From NCBI RefSeq assembly GCF_040938485.1, contig NW_027271086.1:868001-932000 (forward strand): a stretch of DNA of 64,000 nucleotides, given 5' to 3'. Positions 13,852 to 35,924 of this stretch are shown piece after piece. Made by a program: the position numbers and the translations under genes. Source of the stretch: Diadema antillarum (Eukaryota). How positions within the stretch are numbered: the stretch's first letter is position 1; each line of letters starts with the position of its first letter. Under the pieces are notes generated by a model. The model did no database searches. It was not told the origin of the DNA and saw only the letters and a list, made by a program, of their open reading frames with translations.

Positions 13852-14185
13852 CATTGCAAGTGTGCTGTACTTCCGGGTTCAATATTGCTGATTTCTGCCT
13901 GGCTCCAAAGTACATCCAGGAATAGATTCACAATCTCTATTTCTGCTCAGCCAGTAGGAAGGTGCGAACACCTATTAGACTGAATGTGGTCTAACTTTTA
14001 AGATCCCAACAAACTATCAAGAGTTTGTTTACAGACAGATACTAGTAGCTGCACTATGTAGCCCTATCAAAATGGCGGGGCGATCCAGAATGTACACGTA
14101 TATTATGCGAATGTCAGCATTCTTCATGACCTTTTGACTTTGACACATTTATAATTCCATATAGAAGCGGGTTTTCCCCACATTT
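13852..14185 (-). promoter_or_regulatory. Putative non-coding exon 1 and promoter of TRIM copy 2
   Basis: Donor GTAAGC at 13851, ACTTCCGG, CAAAATGGCGG, TGACCTTTTGACTTTGAC and GGGTTTTCCCC (14169-14179), collinear with copy 1. Confidence 0.55.
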
Positions 14186-16333
14186 TGCGTCTACCTTAAA
14201 ATCACAGCGCCACAATGAAATTTAGCCGTGTACAGAGAGTTGTTCGTGCAACATTGAGCTCAGATATAAATTATTCTCTCAAAAGAGAAAGATATCAACA
14301 AAATTATAATGTTGTTATATGTTAATGAGTCACTTCAACGATAGTCTGAGGAAAATTTTAGATGACTAGGTAAATATTTCTAAAATAGCGTCATGTACTA
14401 GTATCCTTTTCTTGTATAGTAATAGCAAAGTTTGTTTGTTGTTATGGAATTATCATAAAGTAGATGCTATGCAGAAAACTAAACCTCACTATTGTTACTT
14501 CTGTTGTAGGCATATGATTGTTTCATTACACTCAATATCGTAATGATGTGAACGGGGACATCTGAACGTTCTGTGTGATGGGAGGGGAAATCTTTGTAGC
14601 CAGATAAAAGTGTAGAAGTATTTCAGATCGAGCCGTGTAAAGGGATTGTGGGTCAAAATGAATAGATAAAATTTTAAACCGTTACTCCACGATAGATTTC
14701 ACCATCTTGGAAACAGGTATATCCAACGTGACACATTTTCATATGAAATCACCTGAACCTCTCCACAATCTTTCCTGATACCTTAACCTTAACTTACCTT
14801 CAATCTTAACTGTCCAGAGTACATTTTTGATATCCCTGCAATTATTTCTGTAAAATACAATTACCAGGTACATTGTGTATATCTCCCTCGAAGAATCTCA
14901 TTCGCAGGTAGCAGCTGTGTTTTAAGGCTATTGCGTACGTTTGTGATCACTGGTGCGCAGCGAAAATAAATAAGAACTCAACTGAACTTAATCAGATGGT
15001 GTACCAATTTTGTGTGAACGTGTGTGTGCATAAGCCTGTGCGAAAGAGTGGGTGAAAGTGACAAGAGCAAAGGGTGTGTGTATGATTAACAGTAATAATA
15101 GCCCCGGTGTCGTTACGGATAGTTACCGGTATGATAATTAAAACCTCCCATTCATTTATCCAAGTCCTTCTCTTTAAATTAAGGTGGTCTGACTTGTTTA
15201 GGGAAAAAAAGACAGGTCCCACAATGGATTTTTTTTTCTTTGCGGGTAAATGAATTAAGAAAAAAAAAAATCACATCTATTGATGACGACATTGCTGTTG
15301 AAATAAAGACTTAGTTATAAGTGCGACATGCTTGGATTTCTTGGGGAAAATTTGTCCCAAAGAGAAATCCATTATGTCTATAATTATCTGCTATCTTGAA
15401 AGTAACATGCCATTTACAAAAACTAACCCAATTTTGCACTTGGATTACCTATTATAACTGATGATATTATTCTTTGCAAGTAAAAATCATTGGCAATCAT
15501 CATTATCATTATTCCAGTTATCCTTCCTTCTTACTGAATTTCTATTATTACGTCAAACAGAATTACTAAAAAAAGTCATGAGTAAAATACAATCATTAAA
15601 TCATTAAATCTCCCACCCACCTTCAAATTCGATCCCCTCTTTAAGCGGTCCAGGGCGTGTCAAAACGTGAACCAGGATGCATCACGTGGACATTTAGATT
15701 TAAGACGGCCATACATCCTCAGATGGACGGAGAAACGTCAAACTTTCTCTACTGTTCAAGAAAGCGTAGCGATTATAATGATCGCCGTTGATAAGGAATG
15801 ATTTGCATCAAGAATAAAAGGGAAAGATAAGTTCTGTAGAAATCCGGTAGTGTTTTCTCTGATCCCAGTTGCATGGTTGCTTTGAAGAGTGCGGAGAAGA
15901 AGTGACTTTGCCTGATTGCTTTAATTACCCCTTTTCCCCTCATTTTCATCGCACATACTGCCTCAAGCAAGTCGAAATATTAGATCGAATCATCACACAT
16001 GCATGTAGGCCTATATTGCTCTTGCCTGTACCCCTACACCATAATTGATAACTAATATTAAAGCAAGTTAAAGGGTTGTGTCCATTTAGAGACTTGTATC
16101 CAGGTCACCGTGTTAGAGAACAGCGTTAACAATCCACTCCAAGAATGGAGGTTATGGCGGGCCATACAAACCATGAACATAAGCGGTAGCTCTCCCATTC
16201 ACTTCTCTACTTCGAACTCGAACAAATCGACAGGGGAGTTATTTCACTTGTCCTGGTTGTATTATACGCGTGCGCGCATGTGATGCGATTGTCCAAGGAG
16301 TCGTTCTCCCCACTCAACTAGAAATGAGGATTA

Positions 16334-16334
<1 letters not shown>

Positions 16335-16400
<66 letters not shown>
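16335..16400. repeat. (GT)n microsatellite
   Basis: Direct reading. Other microsatellites include (CA)n ~17140-17186, (TA)n ~40628-40692, (CT)n ~51505-51546 and ~52606-52640, and (TA)n ~53480-53532. Confidence 0.95.
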
Positions 16401-16404
<4 letters not shown>

Positions 16405-17143
16405 TCAGTGGATGGTAAGTCAAATATAATGTAGTTAGATTGAAGATTGAATTGAATATATTGTGATACTATTTCAATGGGCTTGATTTGACTTCGTACC
16501 TAATTTGATTCAATTCGATTTGATTTGAGGTCGGTTCAGATTATTTCTTGTTGCTTTTATTGATCTTATCATAATCATCGTCACCATTAACAAACCGCAC
16601 TTTAAGTCAGCGCAAGAACATCGAGTACATTTTTATATATATAAAAATGTGATGTGCAACTAAGCGATGCACAAGTATTGAGAGCAGCTAAAGCACAAGC
16701 ATGTCTTCTTAGTGTGTTTGCGAAGGACAGTTTGATTTACGTATATGTGTGGGTGACAATTTTTTTTTTCCATTTTTTTACTATTATCATTACATTGCTA
16801 AATGTAAGGTTTGCACACTTTTTATTGTCAAACTATAACACCCAAAATTGTCAGCCTTCGTCAGTTCAGAACAACCTTTCATTATAACATTGTGGTTTTT
16901 TTTTTCTTCTGTTCAACACAATAAAGGACCAGTATTACCAAAAAAAAAAATCACCATTTAGTTTGGCTTTTCACCAGAAAAGGATATAAAGACAAGACAT
17001 TCTAGAGATATTTGGTATCTCTCTTTCCCTTTTCCTCTCTTTCATACTTCAAAATAGATTTCAAACTCTCACACAAAATCCTACCCAATCTGAACACATG
17101 CAAGTTTGGAACATAAAAAGTAATGAATAATATTTTTCGCACA

Positions 17144-17187
<44 letters not shown>

Positions 17188-18419
17188 GAGACATGGAAAC
17201 AAAGTCCTCAAACTGTATTAGTAACATAATACAGTTCTGCCACCACATATCAAAAAGCAACGCAGGGAAGAAGAAAGCTGTCAAACGATTGCAGGCATAA
17301 AACGATGATAAACATGCAAATTATAATATGCAGAGAAGAACCAAAGAGGAGTCTTAAATGACCGATACTTCAAGTTATTTGAGTATGCATGCTTATCATT
17401 TGACTAGATTTATATCCGGTGAAATGCTGAAACCTCAACTGTTTCCACAGAGAAGAGAGAGAGAGAGACAATCTGAGAGGGCAAAGAAGAGTACATTATG
17501 ATAGTATGATCATGCATGGAGCTAAACTATTCCATGGTATTTAAAGCAACACGGTAGATGGATGAACAGAATTCTACAAACACTGAACTTCTGGTTATAC
17601 AAACAAATAAACAAGAATTAAGATGCGCTGCAAATGTAAATCATGTCATTATTGATTTTCAGTGGAAGTACAGTACCGGTACATAGAAGTTCTCGTTTTA
17701 CCATTATGTATTGACGGATACATCGATATCATCACGTAAAGCGTGTAGTACAGGACAATACAAGGATGCCCATTATGCGTTTGATCAAAGTCAACGATTT
17801 TTAACGTGCTGTGAAAACGATACAATATTATGTTGTGTGTAGTATAAAGTATAAGTTGAACCAAAACGTTTTACAAAATATTGCGATATGATGTATTTAA
17901 AGTCCTTTACATTTCTAAACTATGCCAACGCAGTGTATGGGTGAAATTGGTCTTGCAGTCCTACCAGGCCGATTTGGTTATTCAGTCATAGACATCAATC
18001 AAGCATATTTTGATGTTACGCCTGAAACATCTTTATCGTGGTATTTCAGTTTACTTTAATTCTGTTGGTGTTGTTCATAATACCTTCTCGCTCAGCCTAT
18101 TAGACGCAGTAAGCTGTTTCGTTACAAGAAATGGACTTTATTGGTTTTATACTGTTTTATACTATTTTATTCCAAATTAACAAAAGTGAGATGAGCTATT
18201 ACCCACATCGATAAGAAAGGAACATCATCAAATCGATTTGATGATGAAATAGAAAATAAAGATCACAGATGGAGAGACAGACAGACAGACATCGAAGGGA
18301 GGGGGAATGACAACGGAAAAGGAAGGATGAGGCTCAAATTGATTTTGTTTGGAAAATCTCCTCTGCGATCATTGCCTAAAATCTGGTAGACTCGTCCAAA
18401 TCAACCTTTTGATTTCACG

Positions 18420-18840
18420 TCATTTCATTTATTCTATTTTATTTTCGATATCCAGATAATACAAAATTAACGCAAATAGCACCGACAATTTGGACAAGAA
18501 GATGAAGTTTCATGAAGCGAATACAAATACAAATAGAAACAATAGTACAACAAAAGTAAAATACATACCCACCTGATTTTACATGCACTTATGAATACAC
18601 GTAATGTACAAATAATTTGATCTTCATGAAATCACTGGGAATTGAAAAAGCACTAGATAGTAGGGAATATAGGGGGAACTTGCAAAAGCAGAGCTTGTAC
18701 AATAAGCTAGTTCCCTGATTTAAAAAAAAAAGAGAAACGGAAAAGTCTTTGCAATGGTGCGTACAAAATATACAAATAGACGAATGGGCATTCCGATTTA
18801 GAGGAGATAGAGAGGATAAGGTACAAGACTTAGTAAAGCA
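18420..18840 (-). mobile_element. LINE 3'-UTR fragment with conserved stem-loop
   Basis: Hairpin gggaact...agttccc (18674-18715) encloses aaaagcagagcttgta, the same 16-mer as in the 8202-8245 hairpin. A-rich tail on the minus strand. Boundaries approximate. Confidence 0.55.
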
Positions 18841-18901
18841 ATGAGACAAGATCACACACACACTAACACACACACACACTAACACACACACTAACACACT
18901 A

Positions 18902-18932
<31 letters not shown>

Positions 18933-19205
18933 TCAAGCAAAGCAGAGGTTCGCTTGTTTTTTGGTGTGTTTTTTCGTGTTCTTTCATTTCATTCATTTCT
19001 TTATTTGTCCAAATTATGTATAAAAACATGGCATGGAAAATTGGTGTTGTCACACATTCATAAACACATATTGGCAACAGAAAACAAATTACATTACATA
19101 TAACATCAAATGAATACTCAAAAGAAATACAGGGAACTAAACATACATCAAAACACAAATTATCATCATGTGGTGAACGTGCAAAGAGGGGAAAATTAAT
19201 ATATA

Positions 19206-19452
19206 TATGAAGACTTTGTTTGCAAAAACTGATAAGCCCATATTTGCCAAATGGAGATATTTGCGATTAAAGGTCATCAAAAATAAAGAGAATAATAGGA
19301 AAATTTTTGCTTCTTTTGACCATAACTTCAAAAACGTACCTTTGTATGTAGTGACCAATATTTCATTTAAAAGGTATTATTTTGTACTTTGTGACAGAGA
19401 CCGTACTTTAAAATCTTCAAAAATGGAATTATCGGTTTTTGCGAACAAACTC

Positions 19453-19458
<6 letters not shown>
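19206..19458. mobile_element. ~250 bp MITE with TATGAAG... termini (inverted second copy at 60458-60708)
   Basis: ~30 bp TIRs (tatgaagactttgtttgcaaaaactgataa / ttatcggtttttgcgaacaaactcttcata). The whole body matches 60458-60708 in reverse complement. Confidence 0.8.
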
Positions 19459-19490
<32 letters not shown>

Positions 19491-20292
19491 ACCCGCTACA
19501 ACAAAATGATCCTAAAGTCGGGGGAGGTCGATTATTTGAAAATTGCACGATATAATCCCCTAATCTTTCTGCTTTAAATTGATATATAACACATATATAT
19601 ATGTACATGTACATGTACATGTACATACACAGAAAACTATGGAAGAATCGACTGAGGCAAAAGATATATATAACCACAAATTCTAAAACACCTCACTTTA
19701 TACAGACTACCCTACATCATAATCCATAAATTATAACACATATTGCACATAATTGCTCGCACCCCCTCCCCCACACACACAGCTAAAATCTGCTTCCTTT
19801 CACTGATGCCCTGACACGCCAATGTGCACAATCAACAACTATTGCACATTAACATACGTAGTTTTTAGTCACACACATTTTTTTTTTCTGCAAAGCAAAA
19901 CATTAACTTCATTTTTCCCAAATCACAACAACAAAAACTGTCTTTTAAAACGGAGAATTATCATGGTCACTGTTCCCTGGCTGATAATCGCAGCTTGTTT
20001 CCGTTAACATGTAGGCCTGCGCTTAAGGGGTAATATATGCGTGTCATCATAGTGATTCCCTCAAACCTCTTTGATACCTGCAGTGAATATTATATTTTTC
20101 ATTCATCCATTCATTCATTCATTCATTCATCTAACCATTTCCAGCAGAAACATACATAAATATCTTACAGAAGTTGAATACGTAAATTACATCGCAATGC
20201 ATAAAATAAAAGAAATGTTTAAGGTTGCAAAACATTTAAATCGACATTCGAATATTAGCTTTTAGCTGATTTCAGCTGAATGTTTCCTTATA

Positions 20293-21364
20293 CAGTGCGT
20301 ATAAAAAAGAAACGCAACAAGATTTGATTTCAAATTTGTGAAGATTGTGTTAACTTTACATCAAAGTGAGTAGCAACATCTTAAAACCACATAACTTCTC
20401 TTTCCAATGATATCTTATTTATTCATACACTGTCATGGATGGCTGAGTAATCATTCTTTTTGGACAATGGGTCAAATTGGACTTGGGACCTAGTTTAGAC
20501 ACTGCACGAATCAATGACCTTATTAGAAATTAACTTAACAAATGGAATAATGAAATTAATAATCGCAACTTACCATTGTCTTCTTTTTTTAAATCTCTTT
20601 TTAACATTACATCCCATTCCCCTCATTATGGCCACCATTCCTTTCCACATAGACATTAGCTCTTTTCTCCATTTCACACACAGCCCTACGAGTCATTGGG
20701 GCTTGGTGGCGTAGAGCTTCGAACTCATCAGTGATTCTTTGTTGCAATGTCAGGTGGAGGGGTAATGAACACTTTGCTCTTGAGATAACCCCAAAGAAAC
20801 AAGTCACAACAAGTCAGATCCGGAGATCGTGGTGGCCACTCCACATCATGTATCAAGGCAATCACCCGATTTCCAAATACCTCAGCCAATCTGGGTACTG
20901 CAACTAGTCGATGGGCTGGTCGCGCCATCCTGTGCCCACCATAGGCGGCTGAACACACCCTTTTATTGCACAGGAAAATTTTCCATTAATTCAGGAATCA
21001 CATGTTCATTTAAAATTTGTAAGTATCCATTTCCGTTCATGCTGTTTTCAAAGAAGAAGGGCCCTAGGAGCAAACCGTTTCCACAAAGCCCAGTCCGGAC
21101 ATTCAGCTTTCCAAAAGAAAAAAAAAAGGAAAATTGAAAAGGATTTATGCTGGTCTTACTAACTGAAACTTGGTCCAAAGTCCAATTTGACCCATTGTGC
21201 AAAAAGAATGATTACTTAGCCATACATGACCGTGTAAGAATAAATAAGATATCATTGGAAAGAGGAGATATGTGACTTTAAGATGTTGCTACTCACTTTG
21301 GTGTAAAGTTAACACAATATTCATAAATTTGAAATTAAATCTTGTTACTTTTTTATACGCACTG
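20293..21364 (-). mobile_element. Internally deleted Tc1/mariner element (DD41D rosa/Visitor-like) with ~200 bp long TIRs
   Basis: TA|cagtgcgtataaaaaag...ctttttatacgcactg|TA. Inverted homology extends ~200 bp inward. Transposase remnants GPFFFE, QDGA-PAH and WPPRSPDLTCCDLFLWGYLKSKV. Empty homologous site near 7860. Confidence 0.85.
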
Positions 21365-21555
21365 TATAGTCGTATCATTTAGAGCACTGATATCGCAAAA
21401 ATATATATATATAGCAAATGACTTTGTTTTTGCATTTTGAATGGTCAATCGTCCATACAAATATTTTAACTATTCTTATGAATATCCATGTGTGCATCCA
21501 CCGGCACATGTGTATCCCATTATTACATGTGACCTTTATTCATACAGTATTCTCT

Positions 21556-23451
21556 TCACTTAGAATATCCCTCCAAAGAATATATATATATACATTCCAA
21601 TAAGCTGCTATACAAATCAAAGTAGAGTCTATTTTGAGTGCAGAAAGCTATCTCACCACTCTCAAATTCTTGGAGATAGAAGCGATGTATTTTTTCTGAT
21701 TTTTGTAGTTTGAAATCAATGATGAGATTGCACACGTGCTCAAAATCTCTCGTGTATCGATCGATACTGACGAGACCGTCCTCATCCTTCAACCAGGCTG
21801 CAATGATCGAATCATCTTGACAAACAGCTGGCCAGGAAGACATACCCTCCTTCTTCAAGACATGCTCCTTCTTCCCAGTACCATCAAAGCACATGAGAGC
21901 TGATGAATCTGTCAGTATCAGGCCTCCCGTGGTGTGAAAGGAGAATAAATGCAGAGGCGTATATCCATCAAATATTCTTTCCCTGACAGCCTTACCGCCA
22001 TGTGGGGTAAACACCTGGATCTTCTTGGGTTTCGTGTAACCCATGTAAATATTGTCGTCTCTATCCACAGTGAGACCACCATAGCATCCGTCATCGAAAC
22101 TCATCGTCTCGAACGTAACGTCGAGCTTCTTCCACTCTGAAGTGTAGAGAGACATCCAGTTGTTTATATCACGTACAACACTTCGACCATCGGAAAGAAA
22201 TCCAATTTTAATGACACAGACACCCTTTAGTTTCGTCTTCTGTAACTCTCCATCAGGGGAGTACACACAGATTCCGTCGAAACAGGATCCCACCGCCATC
22301 TTACCGTCTGGTGCACGGGTCATACAGGTCCTAATGGTTTTGCTAGGGAGCTCTACATCTGCTTTTACATCCCAAGTATAACCTTTCAGCTCTCCAAGAC
22401 AAAGTTCACTGACTTTCAAGTGTTTACTAAACGAAATCTTTTGAGCTCGTTCTGTCACACCTTTCGGTGATTGGCCGTCAGGATCATCTCGTCCAAGGAA
22501 GCTCTTTAAGTTCTCACACAGCGTGTCGTGTGCAAACAGGGCGTCTTTCTCCAGCGGTACCTTAACGCCGTTACTTACAAGCTCCTCCATAGCGTTCATA
22601 TGTCGAATTGTTTGGCGACTCTCTTCTTCCATGACTTGTAATTCCTTCTCGAACTTTTCTGACCAACTTTTTGCTTGCCGTTTCAGCGCTTCTCTTCTGG
22701 CTGACAATAGCTGCATGTATTCGTCGTACGTCTTGTCGATGTCATCATTGAGCTTTCCCAGCATGTTTGCTATTTTACTGCGCTGTGTCTCTATGAAATG
22801 GATATGATTTTCAATATTTGTTTTCTTTGATTTTGCCCATTCTTGTAACTGCTTGATGTTTTTCATCAATTTCTCCTCATGGATAGCTGCCTCTTCGATC
22901 TGATGCCCTGCTTGTAAATGCCCTAACATACCGCATCTTAAGCAGACGTACTCCCGACACCCGGTACAGAAACACACCTCATCATCGTTAGGATGTTTCT
23001 TACATTTCCGTCTCCTTTTAAGAGGAACTTTTCCCGAGAGCACCTCGCTCATGGGCACCTTTTCGTGGTTAGAGAACGGTTTCCAAGAAGAGTGTACTGT
23101 CTCACACGATTTGCACATATATTTGCCACAGTCTTGACAGTAGGACACAGCGGGCGGCTTTTCGTCCATCTCACAAGCTGTGCATGTTGGACTCTTGATT
23201 TTCACTTCATCTACCATAGAACTTACGGGTACGTTTGTCTGTAACTTACTCACATCTCCACTGGGCAGGGGCGTTTCTTTCCTGCAAATAGGGCATGTTA
23301 TAGTTTGTTTGGCGGGATGAGCTCGAGAGATACGTTGCAGACAGTCTTTGCAGAAGATATGAGAACACGTCAGTGATCTAGGTTGGTTGAAAAGTGTCAA
23401 ACAGATAGGACACTCCAAATTCTGACTGCTGATTTGATGAAACGTTGCCAT
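21556..23451 (-). CDS. TRIM E3 ubiquitin ligase, type A copy 3 (RING-Bbox1-Bbox2-CC-NHL-like propeller; TRIM56/TRIM71-like architecture without filamin), 631 aa from the ATG
   Basis: Uninterrupted ORF with all zinc ligands present. ATG at 23451 follows a splice-acceptor-like tract, so the ORF-track MLQSQSDT extension is not coding. Confidence 0.92.
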   Translation of the reverse strand: MATFHQISSQNLECPICLTLFNQPRSLTCSHIFCKDCLQRISRAHPAKQTITCPICRKETPLPSGDVSKLQTNVPVSSMVDEVKIKSPTCTACEMDEKPPAVSYCQDCGKYMCKSCETVHSSWKPFSNHEKVPMSEVLSGKVPLKRRRKCKKHPNDDEVCFCTGCREYVCLRCGMLGHLQAGHQIEEAAIHEEKLMKNIKQLQEWAKSKKTNIENHIHFIETQRSKIANMLGKLNDDIDKTYDEYMQLLSARREALKRQAKSWSEKFEKELQVMEEESRQTIRHMNAMEELVSNGVKVPLEKDALFAHDTLCENLKSFLGRDDPDGQSPKGVTERAQKISFSKHLKVSELCLGELKGYTWDVKADVELPSKTIRTCMTRAPDGKMAVGSCFDGICVYSPDGELQKTKLKGVCVIKIGFLSDGRSVVRDINNWMSLYTSEWKKLDVTFETMSFDDGCYGGLTVDRDDNIYMGYTKPKKIQVFTPHGGKAVRERIFDGYTPLHLFSFHTTGGLILTDSSALMCFDGTGKKEHVLKKEGMSSWPAVCQDDSIIAAWLKDEDGLVSIDRYTRDFEHVCNLIIDFKLQKSEKIHRFYLQEFESGEIAFCTQNRLYFDLYSSLLECIYIYSLEGYSK

Positions 23452-24050
23452 GGTGTCGCTCTGTGACTGAAGCAAAAGAAAAATATAGCGGTAAACCCAT
23501 CAACAAGTGACCTACGTTATAGCTGCATAGATTGCATTTACCAAGTAAAAGATTAACAGTTCATGCAAAATATGGTGTCAGAATTTATACATTTTTATAT
23601 TTGAACATACTAATGAACCACAATTTAGCAGAATTGTGTGAATTTAATTTTTCATGTAAAGTTATGAAAAGGAACTGATTGATCAGGTCACCCTTAAAAA
23701 GGGAAGTATAAAGAAGTCTGGCCTGTGCCAAGTTCTACTCATGTCTCCTAATCTCCCTACCTCTTATCTCTTTTCAACAATGTGTGATAAAATCGCTATA
23801 AACGTGAATATAATTTCCCTCCGAGACAATGATTGAAACAGCATTATCATATAAACAGGCTATGTTATACACTGCAGCTTACCTCTATTGGTAAACATGA
23901 TAGCCAAACGAGCAAAATCATAGCAGAAACATAAACCAGAGAAAAATGGAGAATCAAATACAAGTACAGTATTTTTATAGGAATCTTTCATTATAGGCAC
24001 AATTAACATGCATGTGTGGATATAGTTTCCTATTCACTGCTATCGCTTAC

Positions 24051-24375
24051 CAAGTGTGCTGTTGTGCTTCCGGGTTCAATATTGCTGATTTCTGCCTGGC
24101 TCCAAACTACATCCAGGAATGGTTTCGCAATCTCTTTTTCTGTTCAGCCAGTAGAAAGGTGCGAACACCTATTAGACTGAACGTAGTCTAATTTTTAAGA
24201 TCCCAACATAAACTATCAAGAGTTTGTTTACAGACAGATACACTATGTAGCCCTATCAAAATGGCCGGGCGATCCATGAATGTACACGTATATCAGGCGA
24301 ATGTCTGTATTCTTCGTGACCTTTTGACTTTGTCACATTTTTTGTAGTTCTGTAGAAGCGGGTTTTCCCCACATC
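24051..24375 (-). promoter_or_regulatory. Putative non-coding exon 1 and promoter of TRIM copy 3
   Basis: Donor GTAAGC at 24050. Same motif order as copy 1. GGGTTTTCCCC at 24360-24370. Confidence 0.55.
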
Positions 24376-25226
24376 TTGTGTCTACATGAATATCACAGCG
24401 TAAAATGAAATTAAGCCGCGTACAGCGAAATGTTCGTGCAACATTGAGCTCAGATGGAAATTATTCTCTCTCAAAAATGATATCAACAAAATTATAATGT
24501 TTTCATGCTAACGGGGCACTTCAACGATAGTCTGAGGGAAATTTTAAGATGACTAGGTCAATATTTCTTAAATGGTGTCAGTTTTCTTGTACAGTAAGAG
24601 TAAAGTTTGTTTGCTGTTATAGAATTATCATAATAATGATGATGCTATGGAGAAAACTAAACCTTATAACTGTTACTTTTGTTAAAACACATTATAATTG
24701 TGTCATTTCACTCAATATCGTATATGGTGTGAACGGGAACATTAACGTTCTGTGTGACGGGGGATGCGGGAGACGATATATAGTGGAGAATATTGGACAT
24801 GTCTCAAGATACGCCTATTTCATGCATCATTGCAAGCAGATAAAAGTGTAGAAATATTTGAGATCGAGCCGTGTTAACGAGTAGTGGGTGAAAATGAAGA
24901 GGTAAACCTGATTGAGACCCAATACTCTATGATATATTTCGCCCTCTTCGTATATCCAAATTGAGACAATGTCAAATGAAATCCTCTGAACCTTTTTACA
25001 AACTTTCCGGATATCTTAACTTTAACTTACCTTTATGGTCCAGAGTACATTTTAGATATCCCTGCAATTATTTCTGTCCAATACAATTTACCAGGTACAT
25101 TGTATATACATCTCCCTAGAAGAATATATGTATCTAATTTAGCCAGTAGCAGCTGTGTTTTGAGGTTCATACATATGTGGTCATTTATGCGTAACGAAAA
25201 TGAATAAGAAATCAAATGAGCTCATT

Positions 25227-25531
25227 GGCCCGAATTCACGAAGGTGGTACAAATGAAACCATGGTTAAACCATGGACAAAAACCATGGAGCACGTGTGTC
25301 GCACGGAATATTTCGTCGACAAAATTACCATTTCGTTAAAGAATTTTTTATTTCGTGGACGAAATGATCATTTAGTTACAAAATGTTGTCATTTCGTTAT
25401 AAAATAATCATTTCATCTCCGAAATGACTGATTTCGTAACGAAATATTCCATGCGACACTTGGCGCTCCATGGTTTTTTTTTAAAGGTTTAAACCATAGT
25501 TTCATTTGTACTACCTCCGTGAATTCGGGCC
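25227..25531. mobile_element. Paralog of the 4384-4687 palindromic MITE
   Basis: Near-identical sequence inside the duplicated unit. Confidence 0.75.
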
Positions 25532-25794
25532 TCGTGTACTGTTTTGTGTGAATGTGTGTATGCATAAGCCTGTGAGAAAGAGTGAGTAAAGAGCGAAAGG
25601 ATGTGTGTATGATTGACAGTAATTACAACCCCGGTGTAGTAATTGATAGCTACCGGCATCATAATCAAATCCTCTCATTCATTTATCCAACTTCTTCTCT
25701 TTAAATCAAAGTGGTCTGACCTTTTTTTTTTTAACAAGACAGGTTCCACAATGTGTTTTTTTTTTCTTTGCGATGAAATAAATAAAAAAAACAG

Positions 25795-25960
25795 GGGCCC
25801 GTTGCATAAAACTTACTATTGAATTTCAATGGTAACTACCGTCAAAATTAGGCATCACAGCCAATCAGCATCAAGGATTGTAAAATTTACCGCTAATTTG
25901 AAGACTTACCGCTAGAAAGGAGCGGTAAGTCCAGCGGTAAGGGTTTTATGCAACAGGGCC
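25795..25960. mobile_element. Paralog of the 4953-5118 Harbinger-like MITE
   Basis: Same TIRs and CAG TSD. Confidence 0.8.
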
Positions 25961-26709
25961 CAGAAATGACACCCATTAGTAACGACGTTGCTGTTGAAAT
26001 GAAGACTTGGTAATAAGTGCGACATACTTGGATTTCTTGTTGAAAATTTGTCCCAACGAGACATCCATTATGTCTATATTTATCTCCTACCATGGACGTA
26101 ACATGCCATTTACAAAAACTAAGCAAATTTTCCACTTAGATTATCTATAATAACTGATATTATTCTTTGCAAATAAAAATCACCGGCAATCAATCATTAT
26201 CATGATTCCAGTTATCCTTCCTACTTACTGAATTTCCATTATTATGTCAAAGAGAATAACTAAAAAACGTACTGAGTACAATACAATCATAAAAGTGGGC
26301 TTGAATAGACCAATCTCCCACCAACCGTCACACGAAACTCGATCCCCTCAAGAGTCTCTACCTCCTTATGCGGTCCAGGGCGTGTCAAAACGTGAACCAG
26401 GATGCATCACAAAGACATTTGTATTTAAGCCAGCCATACATCCTCAGATGGAGGGGAATCGTCAAACTTCTCTGTAATAATGTTCAAGAAATCGTAGCCA
26501 TTACAATGATTGCCGTTGATAAGGAATGATTTGTATGGAGAATAAAAGGGGAAAATAAGTTCTTTAGAAATTCTTTTCTCATCCCGGTTGCATGATGACT
26601 TAGCTTTAAAGAGTGCAAAGACTGCCAGCACACATCAACAAGCAACGCAGGGAAGAAGAAAGCTGTCAAACGATTGCAAGCATTAAACAATGATAAACAC
26701 GCAAATTAT

Positions 26710-27192
26710 TCAATTCAATTCAATTCAATTCATTTATTTTTCATTCTTCTTTTTCCAACAAAACATAACGCATAATATATTTGGAATTACATCATAAACA
26801 TAAACATTCGACTTTGTAAAAGATAAATAATACAAATAAACAAAAGAATGGATACTGCCAAAAAGTACAAAGTTATGCTTCAGTTGAGAAAAAAAAAAGA
26901 ACTGAGAGGTACACTAAAAACAAGCTTGTATGTTGTGAACCACTTAAAAAATGAACAAACTTATGAATTACGTGTACTTATTTACAAATACTTATCACAG
27001 ATATAATTTAACAGAACGGAACAAGACAGGAGAAATACAAAAGACATGACACGACTTGACAAAAAAGACGGAAAGAATGGGGAGAGAGAAAGCAAAAAAA
27101 AAAGAGAAAGAGAATAAGAGAATGCCTACACACTGAACTAGGGAAATGGAACAGGGGGCGATTGAGAATGTGCTTCAGAGGGCTGGTACTGC
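26710..27192 (-). mobile_element. Unit-specific 483 bp insertion: LINE 3'-UTR ending in (ATTGA)n tail
   Basis: The empty site at 5861-5881 reads gcaaattat-aat-atgcagaag. The insertion replaces aat with no TSD. Minus strand ends aataaatgaattgaattgaattgaa. Stem-loop remnant at 26906-26943. Confidence 0.75.
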
Positions 27193-28396
27193 ATGCAGAA
27201 GAACCAAAGAGGAGTCTAAAAGGACCGATACTTCAAGTTATTTAAGTATATGCTTATAATATGATTAGATTTACATCCGGTGAAATACTGAACCCTGAAC
27301 TGTTTCCACAGAGAAGATATATATATATATATATATAATCTTAGAGGGCAAAGAAGACTACATTATGATAGTATGATTATCCATGGAGCTAAACTATTCC
27401 ATGGTATTTAAAGCAACCCCTGTAGATGGATGAACAGAATTCTACAAAGATTAAACTTCTGGTTACTATAAGTATACAAACAAAGAAACAAACAAAAATA
27501 AAGAAGCGCTGCAAATGTAAATTATGTCATCATTGATTTCAATGGAAATACAGTACCGGTACACAGAAGTTCTCGTTTTACCAATTTGTAGTTGCCGATA
27601 CGCTGATATCATCAGCAAAGCGTGTAGTACACAGGTACAGGATTATACAAGAATGCCTATAAATTATTATTTTGAACAAAGCGCATTTTAACGTGCTGTG
27701 AATGACTATACAATCATATTGTGTGTAACATAAAGTATGATGACATGACCCAGATATTTAAAAAAAATATTGAGATGCATTTACATTTTTACGTTTCACA
27801 TGTGATAAAGATACAATGTTTGAAGTCATTTACATTTTTCACGCTATGTCTACTAAGTGAATGGGTGAAATTGGTGTTGGAGTCCTACAAGGCCGATTTG
27901 ATTATTCAATCATGGTCAGTAATCAAACATATTTGGATTCTCTGCTAGGAATATCTGTAACGTGGTATTTCAGTGAACTTTAATTCTCTTGGTGTTGTTT
28001 ATAATACCTTATCAAGTGAAAAACTTGGTTTATCAAGCAATAACTAGGTTTATCGAAAAACTCTGTTTGTCGTGATAATTTTTTTTTCACTCGATAAGCA
28101 GAGTTTCCCTCGAAAAAAACTGAGTTTTTTCGGCTATAAACTGAGTTTATCGGTCGAGAAACTCAGTTTATCGGAATTATTGGGCATATAGCGTACCATA
28201 TACACACCACACTACCAAAGACTCATTACCATAAACACCGGACCTCCGCTGCAACAAATTGGATGACGTCAGTGGTTTAATACGCCATTTTTTTACTCCA
28301 AATTTACCACGGTGGGAAGAATTTTACACCCATTAAAAAGAAAGGAACATTACAAGTGATACGAGTATGAAAATACAGATGACAGAGGGAGAGAGT

Positions 28397-28428
<32 letters not shown>

Positions 28429-29265
28429 CCACAGGGAAAGAGGTATAAATGTTACTCGTGTATTAAACGCGCTCGTGAGCTATAGATTACGAACTGGCTT
28501 TTGTGATGGACGCCTTCCAAGTCATGTCGTGTCGCCTCTGTGATATACATTTTATAATTCGTATCTATAAGTCATCACGGCATAGTAACGCATAAATCAT
28601 GCATCATAAATAGATAAACGAAAGGAAGTACCACATCTAGTCGCTATTTTAATATAAAAAAATGATAACATTTAAAAATATATATGTAGTATGATATATG
28701 GATCATCACTATTGGTATTGTCAATCAGTGATATATGAGATGAGTTTTGTATGTGGAAAATAAAACCATACACTTAAGATAGGATCAGTTACCCATTTCA
28801 GGAGGAAGGTATGTGCGTCATTACGGTGATTTCCTCATTGGTACCTGTGATGAAGATTAGCTATTTCATTTATTCATTCATTCATTCATTCATTCATTCA
28901 TTTTCCATTTCCTGCAGAAACATATAAATATCTTATAGAAGTTGAATGCATAAATTGCATCACAATGTATAATAAAAGAAGTGAATAAGTTTGCAAAATA
29001 TTGAAATCGAAAATTGAATATTAGCTTTCAATGGCTTTCAGCTGATGTTTCCCAAAAATAATGTCATATCATTGAGAGCACTGATATCGCAAATCAATTG
29101 TTTCAAATGACTTTGTTTTACTTCTTGAATGATCAATCGCCCAAAGAATATTTCATAAGTGTATAGGAATATACATATGTGTAGGCACCGCACACGTGTA
29201 TCCCATTATTGCATGTAAATTCCATTTATCTTGTTTCCCTGTTCACTTAGCTCAAGTTGTTATAT

Positions 29266-30943
29266 ATCATTTCCAACAAATTGAGATTACAATGTAACAA
29301 TGAACATAATAACATGTAATAAACACATAGTTTTTGGTCAACAGAGATAGAAATAAATGCTATATCTTTCTGGAAAACTCCGAAACAAAGTTGTTGGGAA
29401 TGGAGGGGACTGCTAAAAAGCAGAGCTTGTAGTATGCAGTCCCCTCATTAAAAAAAAAGAAAATACAAAGCCTAAAAACGGACTTGGCAATTTACCTTAC
29501 AGATAAAATAAAAGACTGAGTAATACACACATATATTCACACACACACACACACACACAGACGCACATTAACAATCACCAGGCAGCTCTCTAATATTGTA
29601 AAGGAAGAAAAAATAATAATCAAATAAAAATATTAGTGAAGAAGGTATATCTTCAAGATACTGAAGTGGACAAGAAAAGGGAGAAGGGAAAGAGGTGGTG
29701 GGTCATAACCAGGGCACGTGAGGCACAGAAGCTTCGGCTCGCTGAGAGAGTTATAAGATTATAGACAGCATCAACAATTTTGAAAGTCAAAACTGACAAG
29801 AGAATGTATTGAGTTGTGTAAAAATTTCGTTAAAAGTTCTTTACCTTTAAAGAAAAAGGATTGAATCTTACGGCTTCTATTATACTATTATCAAGAGAAT
29901 TTCAGAATTTTGTTCCAGAAGAAGAAAATAAAGATTTTGCAAGAACCGTCCTGGTCAACGGCAAATGATATTCTTGGGATTGGCGGGTCGGATATGCATG
30001 AACAGTTTCGGGTTGTTTTTTTTGTAAGCATGGAATGAAATATAGAGGGGAAAGAATGACTGGTGAGTTTGTTCACTAATTGTTATAGTTGCAAACGGTA
30101 TAAATCATGGGTTTACAAAATATCATTTTCATGAAATAAATCATCAGCATGACTTCTCCGAGATTCGTTACAATTGTTAAGAAGAGGTTTTTTTTCTGCA
30201 ATAATAATTTTCTTTCTATAAGTAGAAAATGTGTTTCCTCATGCGAGTATCCCATAATTTAAGTAAGGTAGTAACAACGTAGGGTAAAACATCAAAGGAT
30301 TCTTTTTTTTGTGGAGAAAAAATCTAATTTTGTTTATGACGCCTATATTCCTGAGAAAAAAATGCGACATATAGAATCAATGTGTAAATTAAAGGTGAGG
30401 TTGTTGTCAAGAATCAAACCAAGAAATTTGATAGAAGACACTTCTTCTATGGTCGTGTCTTCAAGGGAGATATTTCTCGGTAAATTTTCCAGGCAATACT
30501 GAAAAATATAAAACTATATTTGTTGCTTTTTTGTGGGTAGACGGACAGTTTGTTTGCTGTAATCCATTGCAGTAATTTCATTTATTCAATATTTCAAGTA
30601 TCAATTAATCTCTCAGGATCAGAATCATATAAAAACACACGATAATTCATGAAGAAGCACGTTTTGGTCGATAGTATCAAAGGGCTTGGAGAGGTCCAGG
30701 AAGACACCAATATCAAAATGAAATTTATCAATAGCTTTTGAGACTTTATCAAGAAGGTAAAGATTGCATGAGATGTGCTATGTTTTTGCCGAAAGCCAAA
30801 TTGATAATCAGAAATAATTTTGTATCTAAAAACTTCAAAATTTCGAGACAGAAGTTAGCAAAGATATTGGTCTATAGTTGGAAACATCTTCCCGTTCACC
30901 CGTTTTTTGAGGACAGGAATTACGTTGGAAACTTTCGTAACCT
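29266..30943 (-). mobile_element. Paralog of the old LINE (continues at 33882-~34000 beyond the young LINE insertion)
   Basis: Matches 8065-9743 at an offset of about 21200. Confidence 0.8.
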
Positions 30944-33881
30944 TTTTTTGATGGGAGATTACAATATAGATTTATTACAACCCACCCATTTCCATGACAT
31001 ATTACTTTCCAACTCACTGCATCCCCACATCAATAAACCTACCAGAATAAATAACACCACCCATAGTAAAACATTAATAGATAATATACTGTCTAATGTT
31101 ATAAATGAAACCTGTACGAACGGTATTCTTTATTCGGATATATCTGATCATTTACCGATTTTTATGATTAATGATAAATCTGTAATAACTCCAATACGTT
31201 GCCAACCCAAACAGTATTTGAAAATGTATCGAAATGAAACGCCACAAAATATTGATTCATTGAATCAAGATTTATTCGAAGAACAATGGAATGACGTCTT
31301 TGAACTCCAAGATGTTAATTCTTCCTACGAAATTTTTTTACAAAAACTATTAGATTATTATGATAAACATATTCCTTTAACTCCCAAAGTAAATGGAAGG
31401 AAAAGAGCTCGGCAACCGTGGATCACTCAAGGTCTTATACATTCCATTCTTACTCGAAACCGTCTTTATAAAATATCTCTGAGGAAACCTACTCCTGAAA
31501 ACGTGAAAAGGTATAAAACATATAGAAATAGATTAACTTCTTTGATTCGAGTTTCACGTAAATCATATATTTCAAATAAACTCGAATCTAATAAGGATGA
31601 TAAAAATGCTCTTTGGCGGATTGTTAATGAAATACTCAAAAAGAAACCTACGGAATGTCCTGATAGCATTACCCATAATGATAAAGTTATTACTAATCCT
31701 GATCAAATTGCAAATATTTTTAACAATTTTTTTGTTAATGTTGGTCCTTCTTTAGCTGCATCTATTCCCATAAATGATATCAAAAATTATAAAGATTACT
31801 TACCTGAAAGTAATCAAAACTCCTTGTTTTTTACTCCAATAAATGAATCAGAAATTATTGATATTGTTCGATCTCTGAAATGTAGTAATTCCTGTGGGCC
31901 TGACAACTTAAGGGTGAATTTTTTGAAAAAAATAATTTACCCCTTAGCAGCCCCTCTCACCCATATATTTAATTTATCCTTACTTAACGGTGAGTTTCCA
32001 GACTTTTTTAAAATCGCCAAAGTTATCCCCATTTATAAAAGAGAAGATCCATCATTGGTGAAAAATTACAGACCCATCTCATTGTTACCTGCAATATCGA
32101 AAATTTTAGAAAAATTAGTTTATAAGCGTCTCTCCTCGTTCATGATTGAAAATGAAATATTAAATGTGAATCAGTTTGGTTTTAGGAAAGGATTTTCTAC
32201 CGATTATGCTATAATCAAATCTGTTGATAATATTATTGATGCGCTTATTAAAAAGGAGCACATAATTGGAGTTTTTATGGATCTTAGTAAAGCATTCGAC
32301 ACTATTGATCATGACATTTTATTTGAAAAATTACATAATTATGGCGTGAGAGGGATTACTTTGTCATGGTTTAGAAGTTATCTAAGTCATCGAAAACAAT
32401 ATGTTGCATTTAAATCCAGTCATTCGTTCCATTTGAACGTGTCATGTGGTGTCCCTCAGGGATCTATCCTCGGGCCCCTACTTTTTTTGATTTATATTAA
32501 TGATATCATTAATTCCTCTCCATGTTTAAACTTCATTTTATTTGCAGACGACACCAATGTTTTTTATTCCCACAAGGATATTGTAACATTGGTTGATACA
32601 TTTAACATGGAATTAAGTAATATTTCGAAATGGTTTAGAAGTAATAAGCTTTCATTGAATATTGATAAAACATGTTTTATACATTTTCATACGCTTCAAT
32701 CCCAACCCACCCTTCCTCAAAGTATTTCTATTGATGATATAAACATTGCTGAGAAACATTCAACCAAGTTCCTAGGAGTGACCCTAGATAACAATCTAAC
32801 TTGGAATACTCATGTCCAGAATATTATAACAGCAATATCTAAAGCAACTGGTGTGTTAAGGAGAATAAAATACTTAATTAATGATCAAACTTTAATGATG
32901 TTATATAACGCCTTATTTTTACCATATGTAATGTACTGTAATATTGTATGGGGCAACTGTAGCAAAACCAAATTGAACACAATTTTTCTTCCTTAGAAAA
33001 AGGCTCTTCGTATATGCACACATTCAAATTTTTTGGCTCACACTGATCCCATATTTTGTCGCCTAAAAACTCTAAAGGCCCATGATATACATTCATACTT
33101 AACTGCTATATTTATGTATAAACACATTCGAAATTTATTACCATTTTTCCATAATGCCCTAGTAACTAATGATCATATTCACTCATACCCTACCCGTCGT
33201 TCCCATGATTTTCATTTAAGTAATCCAAAGCTTTTACTTGCTCAAAAGTCGATTAGACATCACGGTCCGGATACATGGAACACTCTTCCTGAGGAGTTGA
33301 AACAGTGTGCCTCCTTGTTTTCATTCAAAGCAAACTTAAAGAAGCATATTTTATCACAGTATACTTCAAATACGAATTAAGCACGAATAATTTATATGAC
33401 TTATGTTGGTCTCCCGATAGTAGCAACATCGTAAGTCATTCCCTCTTCCAGCAAACCAATTTTATCATTCCAAATCCCAGCCTATCTGCCCCTGTGCACT
33501 CTCAAGCACTCGCACGCACATTCACCACCATCACACATCAGAGTTTATTTTCCCCTGCTATCTTCGCAGCAGAATTTGTATTGTTTACCAATTTACCTAC
33601 CTACCTGCCTTTTCCTTGGGCCGGCCATCTTTTCAAGCAATGCTTACAATGGCGGCCCTCTGCATTATCATTTCTTAAATATAATATTGTTATTGTAATC
33701 CCAGCTGCATAGACATGCATACTGTAATATCATTAATTTCCTTTTATATCGTTGTTTATGCAAGTCAAACGACTCTGTTTCAAATATACTTTGTATGTTT
33801 CCCATGTTCACGATTATTCAATTTATGTATATATTGATTTGCAGAAAATAATGTATCTATCAAATAAAAAAAAAATAAAAA
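30944..33881 (+). mobile_element. Young 5'-truncated CR1/L2-group LINE (end of APE endonuclease, full RT, 3' UTR, A-rich tail) with one in-frame nonsense codon at 32994-32996
   Basis: MGDYNIDLL, NYRPISLL, QFGFRKG, VFMDLSKAFDTIDH, GVPQGSILGPLLFLIYIND and FADD motifs. The same frame resumes (KKALRIC...) to TAA at 33380. AACCT duplicated at 30939-30943 and 33882-33886; empty site at 9739-9743. Confidence 0.95.
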
Positions 33882-34077
33882 AACCTCAGGGACAACACCA
33901 TTACTTATGGACAAATTAAAGACAGGCACAAGTGGATCGACAATATAATCTATAGTACTTTTTAAAAGAACATTCAATAGAGTCATGCCCAGCACTTTAG
34001 ATTATTCCACCAAAGAATCCACTTTTTTTCTGCTTTGTTGCTGCAAAACACAATAATGTCGAGTATGACAGATCACA

Positions 34078-35922: not shown

Positions 35923-35924
35923 GG

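What the first reader, a model, noticed from the sequence alone, without database searches (positions are those of the whole stretch)
22201..22314. Replacement-dominated divergence in the propeller versus conserved RING/B-box: candidate diversified recognition system
Seen: in 38 codons (22201-22314 vs 34672-34785) I count 11 amino-acid replacements and only one purely synonymous codon change. Variable patches recur along the propeller (SKTIRTCMTR/GKDSMNCITL, RDINNW/YDTKNR, ERIFD/EITCN, SSWPA/FAWSV, KSEKIHRFY/RPERVWYY), whereas the RING shows many silent changes and few replacements. Established: NHL propellers bind RNA or protein via top-face loops (Brat, LIN-41/TRIM71), TRIM56 has an NHL-like antiviral domain, and TRIM5 SPRY loops show positive selection. 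Inference: a family of ubiquitin-ligase sensors with a constant effector module and a hypervariable propeller, possibly an undescribed invertebrate counterpart of TRIM5/finTRIM restriction factors.
Basis: partly seen in the sequence, partly recalled or inferred. Interest (0 to 1): 0.72.

Follow-up and report, generated by a model that had tools for sequence, protein, structure and literature searches.

The report
Sea-urchin TRIM ligases with hypervariable propeller face
This sea-urchin locus holds tandem copies of a large family of ubiquitin-ligase genes in which about 20 loop residues on one face of a C-terminal beta-propeller change far faster than neutral between gene copies, which points to a diversified binding repertoire that no paper I found describes.

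Summary
It is also the most extreme 38-codon window of the gene. Normalised per site, it gives dN/dS 0.61. The whole propeller gives 0.41 for this pair, and no pair of 136 exceeds 0.74.

The window is from Diadema antillarum. It holds four intronless RING/B-box/coiled-coil/NHL-like-propeller genes in an A-B-A-B array. Two are frameshifted. The family has at least 43 and 55 members in two Diadema species.

Site models on 18 coding sequences find about 8% of propeller codons at omega about 4 (M1a vs M2a, 2dlnL 180). The signal holds in three sub-segments, each with its own tree. Sites chosen in D. setosum proteins and tested on D. antillarum genes give omega 4.0 (p 8.5e-9), with a normal silent rate.

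All such sites lie in or beside alternate loops on one propeller face, inferred to be the ligand-binding top face. The opposite face has omega 0.32.

The two gene halves have conflicting trees, so recombination occurs, but it does not explain the contrast. The window's own pair is near neutral at these sites (ratio 1.1). One ortholog pair keeps them conserved.

Immune function is untested. The scan noted this family on other pieces of this genome (s1-225768, s1-225698).

The parts
34078..35922 (-). Gene D: intact intronless ORF of 614 aa with RING, B-box1, B-box2, coiled coil and a six-bladed NHL-like propeller
   Evidence: ORF. Pfam RING E 1e-10 and B-box in 2 stretches. The full-length AF2 model shows helix 188-296 followed by the propeller. 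A protein 98% identical is annotated in D. antillarum.
21556..23451 (-). Gene C: intact intronless paralog, 80% aa and 87% nt identical to D. The ATG is at 23451; the listed ORF starts upstream at a TTG at 23475.
794..2596 (-). Gene A: C-type copy. The duplicated block containing it is 97.7% nt identical to the block containing C. A 1-bp deletion near 927 shifts the frame in blade 5/6, so it is a likely pseudogene or an assembly error.
9937..11781 (-). Gene B: D-type copy, 98.4% nt identical to D. It has a 2-bp insertion at 10474-10475 and a 1-bp insertion at 10155, so the ORF (10429-11805) is truncated at 458 aa. It is a likely pseudogene.
34090..34857 (-). NHL-like propeller of gene D (residues 356-611). 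Positively selected codons are 375, 390, 391, 412, 414, 415, 452, 457, 473, 475, 498, 500, 514, 516, 540 and 588. Residue p occupies bases 35920-3p to 35922-3p+... more simply, it starts at base 35922-3(p-1) on the minus strand.
   Evidence: AF2 model and Foldseek. M2a posterior probability above 0.95. Structural class omegas.
21616..22386 (-). NHL-like propeller of gene C
34672..34785 (-). They contain 5 of the 16 selected sites (390, 391, 412, 414, 415).
22201..22314 (-).
35752..35883 (-). C3HC4 RING finger of gene D (residues 14-57). Most of its metal ligands are invariant and the rest nearly invariant across 84 family members.
35362..35661 (-). B-box1 (residues 88-134) and B-box2 (150-187) of gene D. 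Sites 119, 122 and 171 fall in a small omega>1 class.
35035..35361 (-). Long coiled-coil helix of gene D (residues 188-296), followed by two short helices (303-319, 327-337) as in TRIM dimers
1..35935 (.). A-B-A-B array. A two-gene unit of about 21 kb is duplicated (block 1-5869 matches 20859-26709 at 97.7%; 9739-11794 matches 33882-35935 at 98.4%). The array continues to the left of the window.

Best explanation
The stretch lies in the propeller of one member of a large family of intronless TRIM-type E3 ubiquitin ligases expanded in Diadema. Each protein has a RING, two B-boxes, a coiled coil and a six-bladed NHL-like beta-propeller.

Shown here:
- About 20 residues in the d-a and b-c loops on one propeller face change at about four times the silent rate between paralogs.
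- The strands, the opposite face and the RBCC are under purifying selection.
- The silent rate at the fast sites is normal, so this is selection and not local hypermutation.
- The N-terminal module and the propeller have different genealogies, so recombination or gene conversion reshuffles them.

Inferred:
- The variable face is the top face, which Brat, LIN-41 and TRIM71 use to bind RNA.
- Each paralog binds a different ligand (RNA or protein) through this aromatic- and arginine-rich surface.
- The coiled coil dimerises the protein, and the RING ubiquitinates the bound target or signals.
- New specificities arise soon after tandem duplication and are then held, since one ortholog pair is conserved.

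The most likely use is an intracellular recognition repertoire against viruses, transposons or other parasites. This is analogous to finTRIM/TRIM5, but with an NHL propeller in place of B30.2. The immune role is the least secure step.
For: Identity and architecture:
- Pfam finds RING and B-box.
- The full-length AF2 model gives RING, two B-boxes, a 109-residue helix and a propeller.
- The propeller model has pLDDT 92.5 with 24 strands.
- The top Foldseek matches are TRIM-NHL domains, TM 0.7-0.79. The profile matches Thin, TRIM3, TRIM71, TRIM2 and Brat at E 2e-7 to 4e-5.
- The family has at least 43 D. antillarum and 55 D. setosum 90%-identity clusters, and relatives of about 40% identity occur in S. 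purpuratus and Lytechinus.

Selection:
- Entropy over 71 paralogs shows isolated positions of 2.5-3.7 bits between conserved strands.
- My codon engine reproduces the IQ-TREE likelihood.
- M1a vs M2a on the propeller gives 2dlnL 179.9, with omega 4.2 in 8% of sites.
- Three sub-segments with their own trees give 2dlnL 64.5, 63.2 and 45.8.
- Classes defined from structure alone give omega 0.98 for face-X loops, 0.32 for face-Y loops and 0.54 for strands.
- Of the top 20 sites, 15 are in face-X loops (p 1.7e-6), 5 are in adjacent strand ends and none is on face Y.
- Sites chosen in D. setosum proteins and fitted on 15 D. antillarum CDS give alpha 0.92, beta 3.71, omega 4.0, p 8.5e-9.
- Tree-free ratios for tandem pairs are 5.1, 4.1, 2.4 and 2.3.

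Face assignment and composition:
- The C-terminus is on the bottom surface in the TRIM2 NHL domain (PMC9634614), and the last strand of the model runs from face X to the C-terminus.
- The selected sites are 21% aromatic, against 7-8% in other loops, and are rich in Arg and poor in acidic residues.
Against: - The window's own C/D pair is only at neutrality at the hypervariable class (ratio 1.1, p 0.38).
- Domain-wide omega is below 1 in all 136 pairs.
- The one clean ortholog pair (gene D against D. setosum L003:1-1134) has propeller omega 0.27, and 1 of 16 selected sites differs. That argues against a continuing arms race in that gene.
- Recombination is demonstrated and is known to inflate site-model likelihood ratio tests.
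- My site models used fixed topologies and scaled branch lengths, NEB posteriors, and 18 of more than 100 genes.
- Per-site FEL-like tests are weak: 9 sites at p<0.05, and at most 2 survive an FDR of 0.1 by my own Benjamini-Hochberg estimate from the p-values.
- There is no expression, ligand or infection evidence.
- Two of the four copies in the window are frameshifted.
Confidence: 0.6

Rival explanations
1. Relaxed constraint only. The propeller loops are simply tolerant of change, and the replacement excess reflects weak purifying selection after duplication with no adaptive diversification.
For: Domain-wide omega is below 1 everywhere (0.41 for C/D; median 0.45; maximum 0.74). The C/D pair is at 1.1 at the fast sites. 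Two copies in the window are already pseudogenes.
Against: Relaxation cannot push omega above 1. The site class sits at omega about 4, with p between 8.5e-9 and about 1e-39. Tandem pairs show dN at these sites 4-5 times dS. Exposed loops of the opposite face stay at omega 0.32. The sites are conserved between orthologs.
Confidence: 0.08
2. Artefact of recombination or gene conversion. Mosaic histories among tandem paralogs, with the 5' half homogenised, create both the contrast between halves and a false omega>1 signal.
For: Each half rejects the other's tree (AU p 8e-45 and 0.0014). L005 and L010 have dS 0.07 in the N part but 0.29 in the propeller. C/D dS is lower in the N half (0.28 against 0.40), with a tract of near-zero dS around codons 181-260. 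Most reciprocal-best inter-species pairs have orthologous N parts but dissimilar propellers.
Against: The signal persists in three 85-codon segments with their own trees. It also persists in tree-free pairwise tests with sites chosen in the other species. The silent rate at the fast sites is normal. Conversion would lower dN and dS together, yet the C/D ratios between halves are 0.33 for dN and 0.70 for dS. The propeller alignment has 0-2 gaps per sequence.
Confidence: 0.07
3. Real diversifying selection, but for endogenous targets. The paralogs would be post-transcriptional regulators or E3 ligases for different host mRNAs or proteins (development, gametes, transposon transcripts) and not pathogen sensors.
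For: Characterised TRIM-NHL proteins (Brat, Mei-P26, LIN-41/TRIM71) are developmental RNA-binding regulators that use the top face (PMC9070667, PMC5908797, PMC4015489, listed; PMC9634614). The selected sites are conserved between the two Diadema species in the clean ortholog pair, as expected for stable targets. Some paralogs sit beside homeobox genes, which earlier scan notes s1-225698 and s1-208715 read as an early-embryo pmar1 cluster.
Against: Dozens of tandem copies, frequent pseudogenes, omega about 4 on a binding face and module shuffling are the usual signature of conflict-driven families such as TRIM5 and finTRIM (PMC2657112). In S. purpuratus, genes auto-named TRIM45/71/56-like are induced in coelomocytes (PMC13043383), but I could not link them to this family.
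Confidence: 0.25

Closest known systems
finTRIM / bloodthirsty TRIM families of teleost fish and primate TRIM5/TRIM22
   Same: They are multigene, tandemly duplicated RBCC E3 ligases in which positive selection is concentrated in surface loops of the C-terminal recognition domain (PMC2657112, listed). As in finTRIM, the signal here lies among paralogs.
   Different: The recognition domain here is a six-bladed NHL-like propeller, not B30.2/SPRY. The host is an echinoderm. No antiviral or inducible behaviour is known. The one ortholog pair is conserved, unlike TRIM5.
Class VII TRIM-NHL proteins (Brat, Mei-P26, Thin/TRIM32, LIN-41/TRIM71, TRIM2, TRIM3)
   Same: They give the best structural and profile matches for the propeller. 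The RBCC-NHL order is the same. The ligand-binding top face is the face that varies here (and the strand order).
   Different: Sequence identity is 13-17%. The Pfam NHL model is not matched by gene D and is matched only weakly by 10 of 105 members. There is no filamin/Ig domain. The known members are single-copy conserved regulators, whereas this is a family of 50 or more genes per genome with hypervariable loops.
Expanded innate-immune gene families of sea urchins (TLR, NLR, SRCR, Sp185/333)
   Same: These are lineage-specific tandem expansions with rapid diversification and segmental duplications (PMC3367398 and PMC5103432, listed).
   Different: Those are LRR, SRCR or unique secreted proteins. 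I found no description of a diversified TRIM-NHL family. The only mention is that about 140 genes are annotated as TRIM in S. purpuratus (PMC13043383).

Membership tests
TRIM / RBCC E3 ligases | N-terminal C3HC4 RING finger | tested here: met
   Pfam zf-RING_UBOX E 1e-10 and zf-C3HC4 above cut-off. Most Cys/His ligands are invariant and the others nearly invariant in 84 members.
TRIM / RBCC E3 ligases | One or two B-boxes after the RING | tested here: met
   PF00643 above cut-off with two stretches. Two zinc-finger-like modules at 88-134 and 150-187 in the model.
TRIM / RBCC E3 ligases | Long coiled coil after the B-boxes | tested here: met
   The AF2 model has a single helix at 188-296 and return helices at 303-337, with pLDDT 80-93. 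The Pfam TRIM_CC match is only weak, E 0.17. Dimerisation was not tested.
TRIM / RBCC E3 ligases | E3 ubiquitin-ligase activity | not testable with these tools
   This needs an in vitro ubiquitination assay.
TRIM-NHL (class VII, Marin subfamily C) | C-terminal six-bladed NHL beta-propeller | tested here: met
   The model has 24 strands and pLDDT 92.5. The top 18 Foldseek matches are TRIM-NHL domains, TM 0.68-0.79. The profile matches Thin, TRIM3 and TRIM71 at E 2e-7 to 1e-6 on the repeat motif.
TRIM-NHL (class VII, Marin subfamily C) | Pfam NHL repeat (PF01436) matched | tested here: inconclusive
   There is no NHL hit for genes A-D. Only 10 of 105 family propellers give weak NHL hits, while 88 hit the related SGL model, all or nearly all below its cut-off.
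TRIM-NHL (class VII, Marin subfamily C) | Filamin/Ig domain between coiled coil and NHL (TRIM2/3/45/71; absent in TRIM32) | tested here: not met
   Residues 297-355 are helices and linker only.
TRIM-NHL (class VII, Marin subfamily C) | RNA binding through the top face | not testable with these tools
   The only evidence is composition: aromatic and Arg enrichment and acidic depletion at the variable sites.
TRIM5 / finTRIM-type diversified restriction-factor families | Tandem multigene expansion | tested here: met
   A-B-A-B array. It continues outside the window. There are at least 43 and 55 clusters in the two species.
TRIM5 / finTRIM-type diversified restriction-factor families | Positive selection in surface loops of the C-terminal recognition domain | tested here: met
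   This holds at family level, not for the window's own pair.
TRIM5 / finTRIM-type diversified restriction-factor families | B30.2/SPRY recognition domain | tested here: not met
   There is no SPRY/PRY hit, and the domain is an NHL-like propeller.
TRIM5 / finTRIM-type diversified restriction-factor families | Antiviral activity or induction by infection | not testable with these tools
   No RNA run holds the gene. S. purpuratus TRIM induction (PMC13043383) could not be tied to this family.
TRIM5 / finTRIM-type diversified restriction-factor families | Positive selection between orthologs (TRIM5-like arms race) | tested here: not met
   Gene D against its D. setosum ortholog: propeller omega 0.27, and 1 of 16 selected sites differs. 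This is a single pair.

The most novel reading that the evidence does not exclude
Echinoids carry an undescribed class of intracellular, germline-encoded recognition receptors. These would be dozens of TRIM E3 ligases whose NHL-propeller top face acts as a paratope-like, aromatic-rich hypervariable surface. The surface would be diversified by positive selection straight after tandem duplication, and recombination would re-pair it with RBCC modules. The receptors would recognise pathogen or transposon RNA or proteins.
Probability: 0.3. Interest if true: 0.85.

Novelty: new variant of a known kind. Interest (0 to 1): 0.62.

Why it matters
Sea urchins are a reference case for very large innate-immune gene repertoires, but TRIM genes there have only been counted, not analysed. 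A family of 50 or more genes per genome in which selection diversifies one face of an NHL propeller would extend the TRIM5/finTRIM principle (constant ligase, variable recognition domain) to a different fold and to a non-vertebrate deuterostome. It would also identify the NHL top face, known as an RNA-binding surface, as evolvable recognition hardware. The roughly 20 sites give a concrete map for swapping loops and testing ligands. From my own knowledge, not checked here: D. antillarum is a keystone Caribbean grazer that has suffered mass die-offs, so candidate recognition genes also have practical interest.

Tried and rejected
- IQ-TREE codon-model searches with bootstrap timed out. I replaced them with nucleotide trees plus codon branch lengths on fixed topologies.
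- A single script fitting M0 to M8 timed out. I ran only M0, M1a and M2a. M7/M8 were not done.
- Searches failed on a thread-count error.
- Per-site FEL-like tests had little power with 18 sequences, so I did not rely on them.
- A search for RNA runs found none. The two runs that hold parts of the gene are fragmentary DNA-type contigs and say nothing about expression.
- I tried to link S. purpuratus relatives (XP accessions) to the UVB-induced TRIM genes of PMC13043383. The supplement uses LOC identifiers that I could not map.
- Five literature searches found no description of a diversified TRIM-NHL family in echinoderms or other invertebrates. The library holds open-access papers only, so this is not proof of absence.
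- I considered haplotype mis-assembly as the cause of the A/C and B/D near-identity. It is not excluded, but the public contig holds a further D-type copy to the left of the window, which favours a real array.
- I rejected a mutational hotspot at the variable sites, because the silent rate there is 0.92 against 0.98 elsewhere.
- I did not use the large representative-protein search, because the word search and the family scans settled the identity.
Full report
**What is at the coordinates.**
Both stretches are in frame on the minus strand and encode residues 380-417 of two paralogous genes. Gene C runs from the ATG at 23451 to the stop at 21556. Gene D spans 34078-35922.

The window holds four such genes, all intronless and on the minus strand. 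A (794-2596) and C are one type. B (9937-11781) and D are the other. The blocks containing A and C are 97.7% identical in DNA, and B and D are 98.4% identical, so a two-gene unit of about 21 kb has been duplicated recently. C and D are 87% identical in DNA and 80% in protein.

A carries a 1-bp deletion near base 927. B carries a 2-bp insertion at 10474-10475 and a 1-bp insertion at 10155. None of these lies in a long homopolymer, so both copies are probably pseudogenes. A public contig shows that the array continues to the left of the window, with a further D-type copy and another paralog.

**Is the observation more than chance?**
Raw codon counts mislead, because non-synonymous sites outnumber synonymous ones by about 3.4 to 1.
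- Nei-Gojobori on the 38 codons gives dS 0.224, dN 0.136 and omega 0.61.
- The window is the most extreme in the gene. Only 3 of 573 windows of this size show 11 or more replacement codons with 1 or fewer silent ones.
- For C against D, the propeller (codons 356-605) has dN 0.165, dS 0.40 and omega 0.41.
- The N-terminal 355 codons have dN 0.054, dS 0.28 and omega 0.19. The RING alone has omega 0.15.
- The contrast between halves is real (81:33 against 40:44 replacement:silent codons, p 0.001), but neither half exceeds 1.

**Identity.**
The closest database protein (98%) is from the sea urchin Diadema antillarum. At least 43 clusters from that species and 55 from D. setosum belong to the family at 58-79% identity. 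Relatives of about 40% identity occur in Strongylocentrotus and Lytechinus.

Pfam finds the RING and two B-box stretches, but only a sub-threshold SGL match for the C-terminus. An AlphaFold2 model of residues 341-614, built on 105 family sequences, is confident (pLDDT 92.5) and has 24 strands. Its best matches in the PDB are the NHL domains of Mei-P26, Brat, TRIM2, TRIM3, TRIM71, Thin and Lin41, with TM 0.68-0.79 and 13-17% identity. The family profile also matches their sequences at E 2e-7 to 4e-5 through the canonical repeat motif.

The full-length model shows a RING, two B-boxes, one 109-residue helix (188-296), two return helices and then the propeller, with no filamin domain. The protein is therefore a TRIM with a divergent NHL-type propeller.

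**Family-level variability.**
Shannon entropy over 71 full-length Diadema paralogs shows isolated positions of 2.5-3.7 bits. In gene D numbering these are 370-375, 390-391, 412/414/415, 429-430, 452-453/457, 473-475, 498/500, 514/516/518, 538/540 and 586-588. They recur about every 20 residues between well conserved strands.

**Codon analysis.**
I fetched 16 further intact intronless coding sequences from both species. One of them, L003:1-1134, is the D. setosum ortholog of gene D at 91.5% aa identity.
- Across 136 pairs, mean dS is 0.46 in the N part and 0.39 in the propeller. Mean dN is 0.134 and 0.169. Median omega is 0.30 and 0.45. No pair has propeller omega above 0.74. The 'constant module' is thus only relatively constant.
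- I wrote a Goldman-Yang likelihood engine that reproduces the IQ-TREE log-likelihood to 0.001.
- With fixed topology and scaled branch lengths, M2a beats M1a on the propeller by 2dlnL 179.9, with omega 4.2 in 8% of codons. On the N part it wins by 26.8, with omega 3.3 in 2.4% of codons.
- Sixteen propeller codons have posterior probability above 0.95. In the N part there are three: 119 and 122 in B-box1 and 171 in B-box2.

**Controls for recombination and circularity.**
- The two halves reject each other's trees (AU p 8e-45 and 0.0014). For example, L005 and L010 are sisters with dS 0.07 in the N part but have dS 0.29 in the propeller. Modules are therefore exchanged among paralogs.
- The selection signal nevertheless persists in three 85-codon segments, each with its own tree (2dlnL 64.5, 63.2 and 45.8).
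- I defined the site class from the 20 highest-entropy positions in 48 D. setosum proteins and fitted it on 15 D. antillarum genes. That gives a silent rate of 0.92, a replacement rate of 3.71 and omega 4.0 (LRT against 1: 33.2, p 8.5e-9). The other 235 codons give omega 0.44. The normal silent rate excludes a mutational hotspot.
- Tree-free tests on tandem neighbours compare dN at those 20 codons with dS of the domain. The ratios are 5.1 (p 1e-6), 4.1 (8e-6), 2.4 and 2.3.
- The same test gives only 1.1 (p 0.38) for the window's own C/D pair, and 0.2 for D against its ortholog.
- Per-site FEL-like tests are weak with 18 sequences.

**Where the sites lie.**
I assigned the 24 strands of the model to blades and split the loops into two alternating sets. 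The set that joins strands d-a and b-c (65 codons) has omega 0.98. The other set (55 codons) has 0.32, and the strands have 0.54.

Of the 20 high-entropy sites, 15 are in the first set of loops (p 1.7e-6). Five are in the first or last residues of adjacent strands, and none is in the second set. Because consecutive loops alternate between faces, all the sites lie on one face.

The last strand of the model leaves this face and ends at the C-terminus. In the TRIM2 NHL domain the C-terminus is on the bottom surface, and the N- and C-terminal strands share blade 6 (PMC9634614). The variable face is therefore the top face, which binds RNA in Brat and LIN-41.

The selected sites carry 7-17 different residues across paralogs. 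They are 21% aromatic, against 7-8% in other loops, and they are rich in Arg and poor in acidic residues. That composition fits a binding surface.

**Tempo.**
Gene D and its D. setosum ortholog differ at 1 of 16 selected sites, and propeller omega is 0.27. Tandem paralogs at a similar silent distance (the L009 pair, dS 0.157) differ at 12 of 16. In the same pair (P0041/P0042), protein comparison shows the scaffold differing by 4.3% and the selected sites by 50%. This suggests diversification shortly after duplication, or after a conversion event, followed by retention. It rests on one clean ortholog pair from the codon data and a second from protein comparison (P0053/P0054).

**Interpretation.**
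The evidence supports a large TRIM family with a diversified binding face on an NHL-type propeller.
- Inferred, not shown: each paralog recognises a different RNA or protein, and the RBCC dimerises and ubiquitinates.
- Analogy only: an antiviral or anti-parasite role, by comparison with finTRIM/TRIM5 (PMC2657112).
- Not excluded: endogenous targets such as developmental mRNAs or transposon transcripts. This is favoured by the ortholog conservation and by homeobox-gene neighbours of some paralogs (scan notes s1-225698, s1-208715).
- No RNA data exist in the runs on offer.
- In S. purpuratus, genes auto-named TRIM45/71/56-like are induced in coelomocytes after UVB (PMC13043383). I could not tie them to this family.

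**Novelty.**
Five literature searches found no account of a diversified TRIM-NHL family in echinoderms or other invertebrates. Marin's TRIM survey does not mention sea urchins (PMC3503706). The principle is known (TRIM5, finTRIM). The fold of the variable domain and the host lineage are new, so I rate this a new variant of a known kind. Other first-stage notes of this scan describe the same family on other pieces of this genome (s1-225768, s1-225698, s1-220886).

**Limits.**
- The codon models are my own implementation, with fixed branch lengths and NEB posteriors.
- I used 18 of more than 100 genes.
- Recombination within segments was not modelled.
- The face assignment rests on topology.
- There are no functional data.

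Noticed in passing
window 30738-33380 (+): An ORF of 752 aa has a reverse-transcriptase domain (RVT_1, E 7e-39), typical of a non-LTR retroelement. It lies in an insertion of about 2.9 kb (30943-33882) that the first copy of the duplicated unit lacks.
   Followed up: partly
L012:10001-23357 (left of window base 1): The TRIM array continues outside the window. There is another D-type copy 98.7% identical to D (protein P0001, modelled with an intron) and a further paralog 87-89% identical to A-D.
   Followed up: partly
L001:3898-5136 and L004:20647-21676: Homeodomain genes of 223-230 aa sit next to TRIM paralogs on two other contigs. This matches earlier scan notes about pmar1-type homeobox genes co-amplified with TRIM genes.
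   Followed up: no
window 35362-35661 (gene D B-boxes): A small class of N-terminal codons also shows omega above 1 (M2a posterior above 0.95): 119 and 122 in B-box1 and 171 in B-box2.
   Followed up: partly
genes C and D, codons about 181-260 (window 35143-35382 in D): This tract has almost no silent differences (dS 0-0.11) but 7-9 replacements, and is flanked by dS of 0.45-0.7. It may be a gene-conversion tract between the two types in the coiled coil.
   Followed up: no
L005:10001-11857 vs L010:10001-11839: A D. setosum gene and a D. antillarum gene have near-orthologous N-terminal halves (dS 0.07) but unrelated propellers (dS 0.29). This suggests exchange of the whole recognition module.
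   Followed up: partly
L008:10001-11851: One paralog lies inside the span of an ADAMTS-like gene model on the opposite strand, presumably within an intron.
   Followed up: no
window 11795-15900: The upstream region of copy B resembles that of the A/C type (84-87% identity) and not that of D. This fits the scan note that copy B is a chimera.
   Followed up: partly
window 5953-6099, 47539-47704, 54784-54935: Runs of N (147, 166 and 152 bases). I left them untouched.
   Followed up: no
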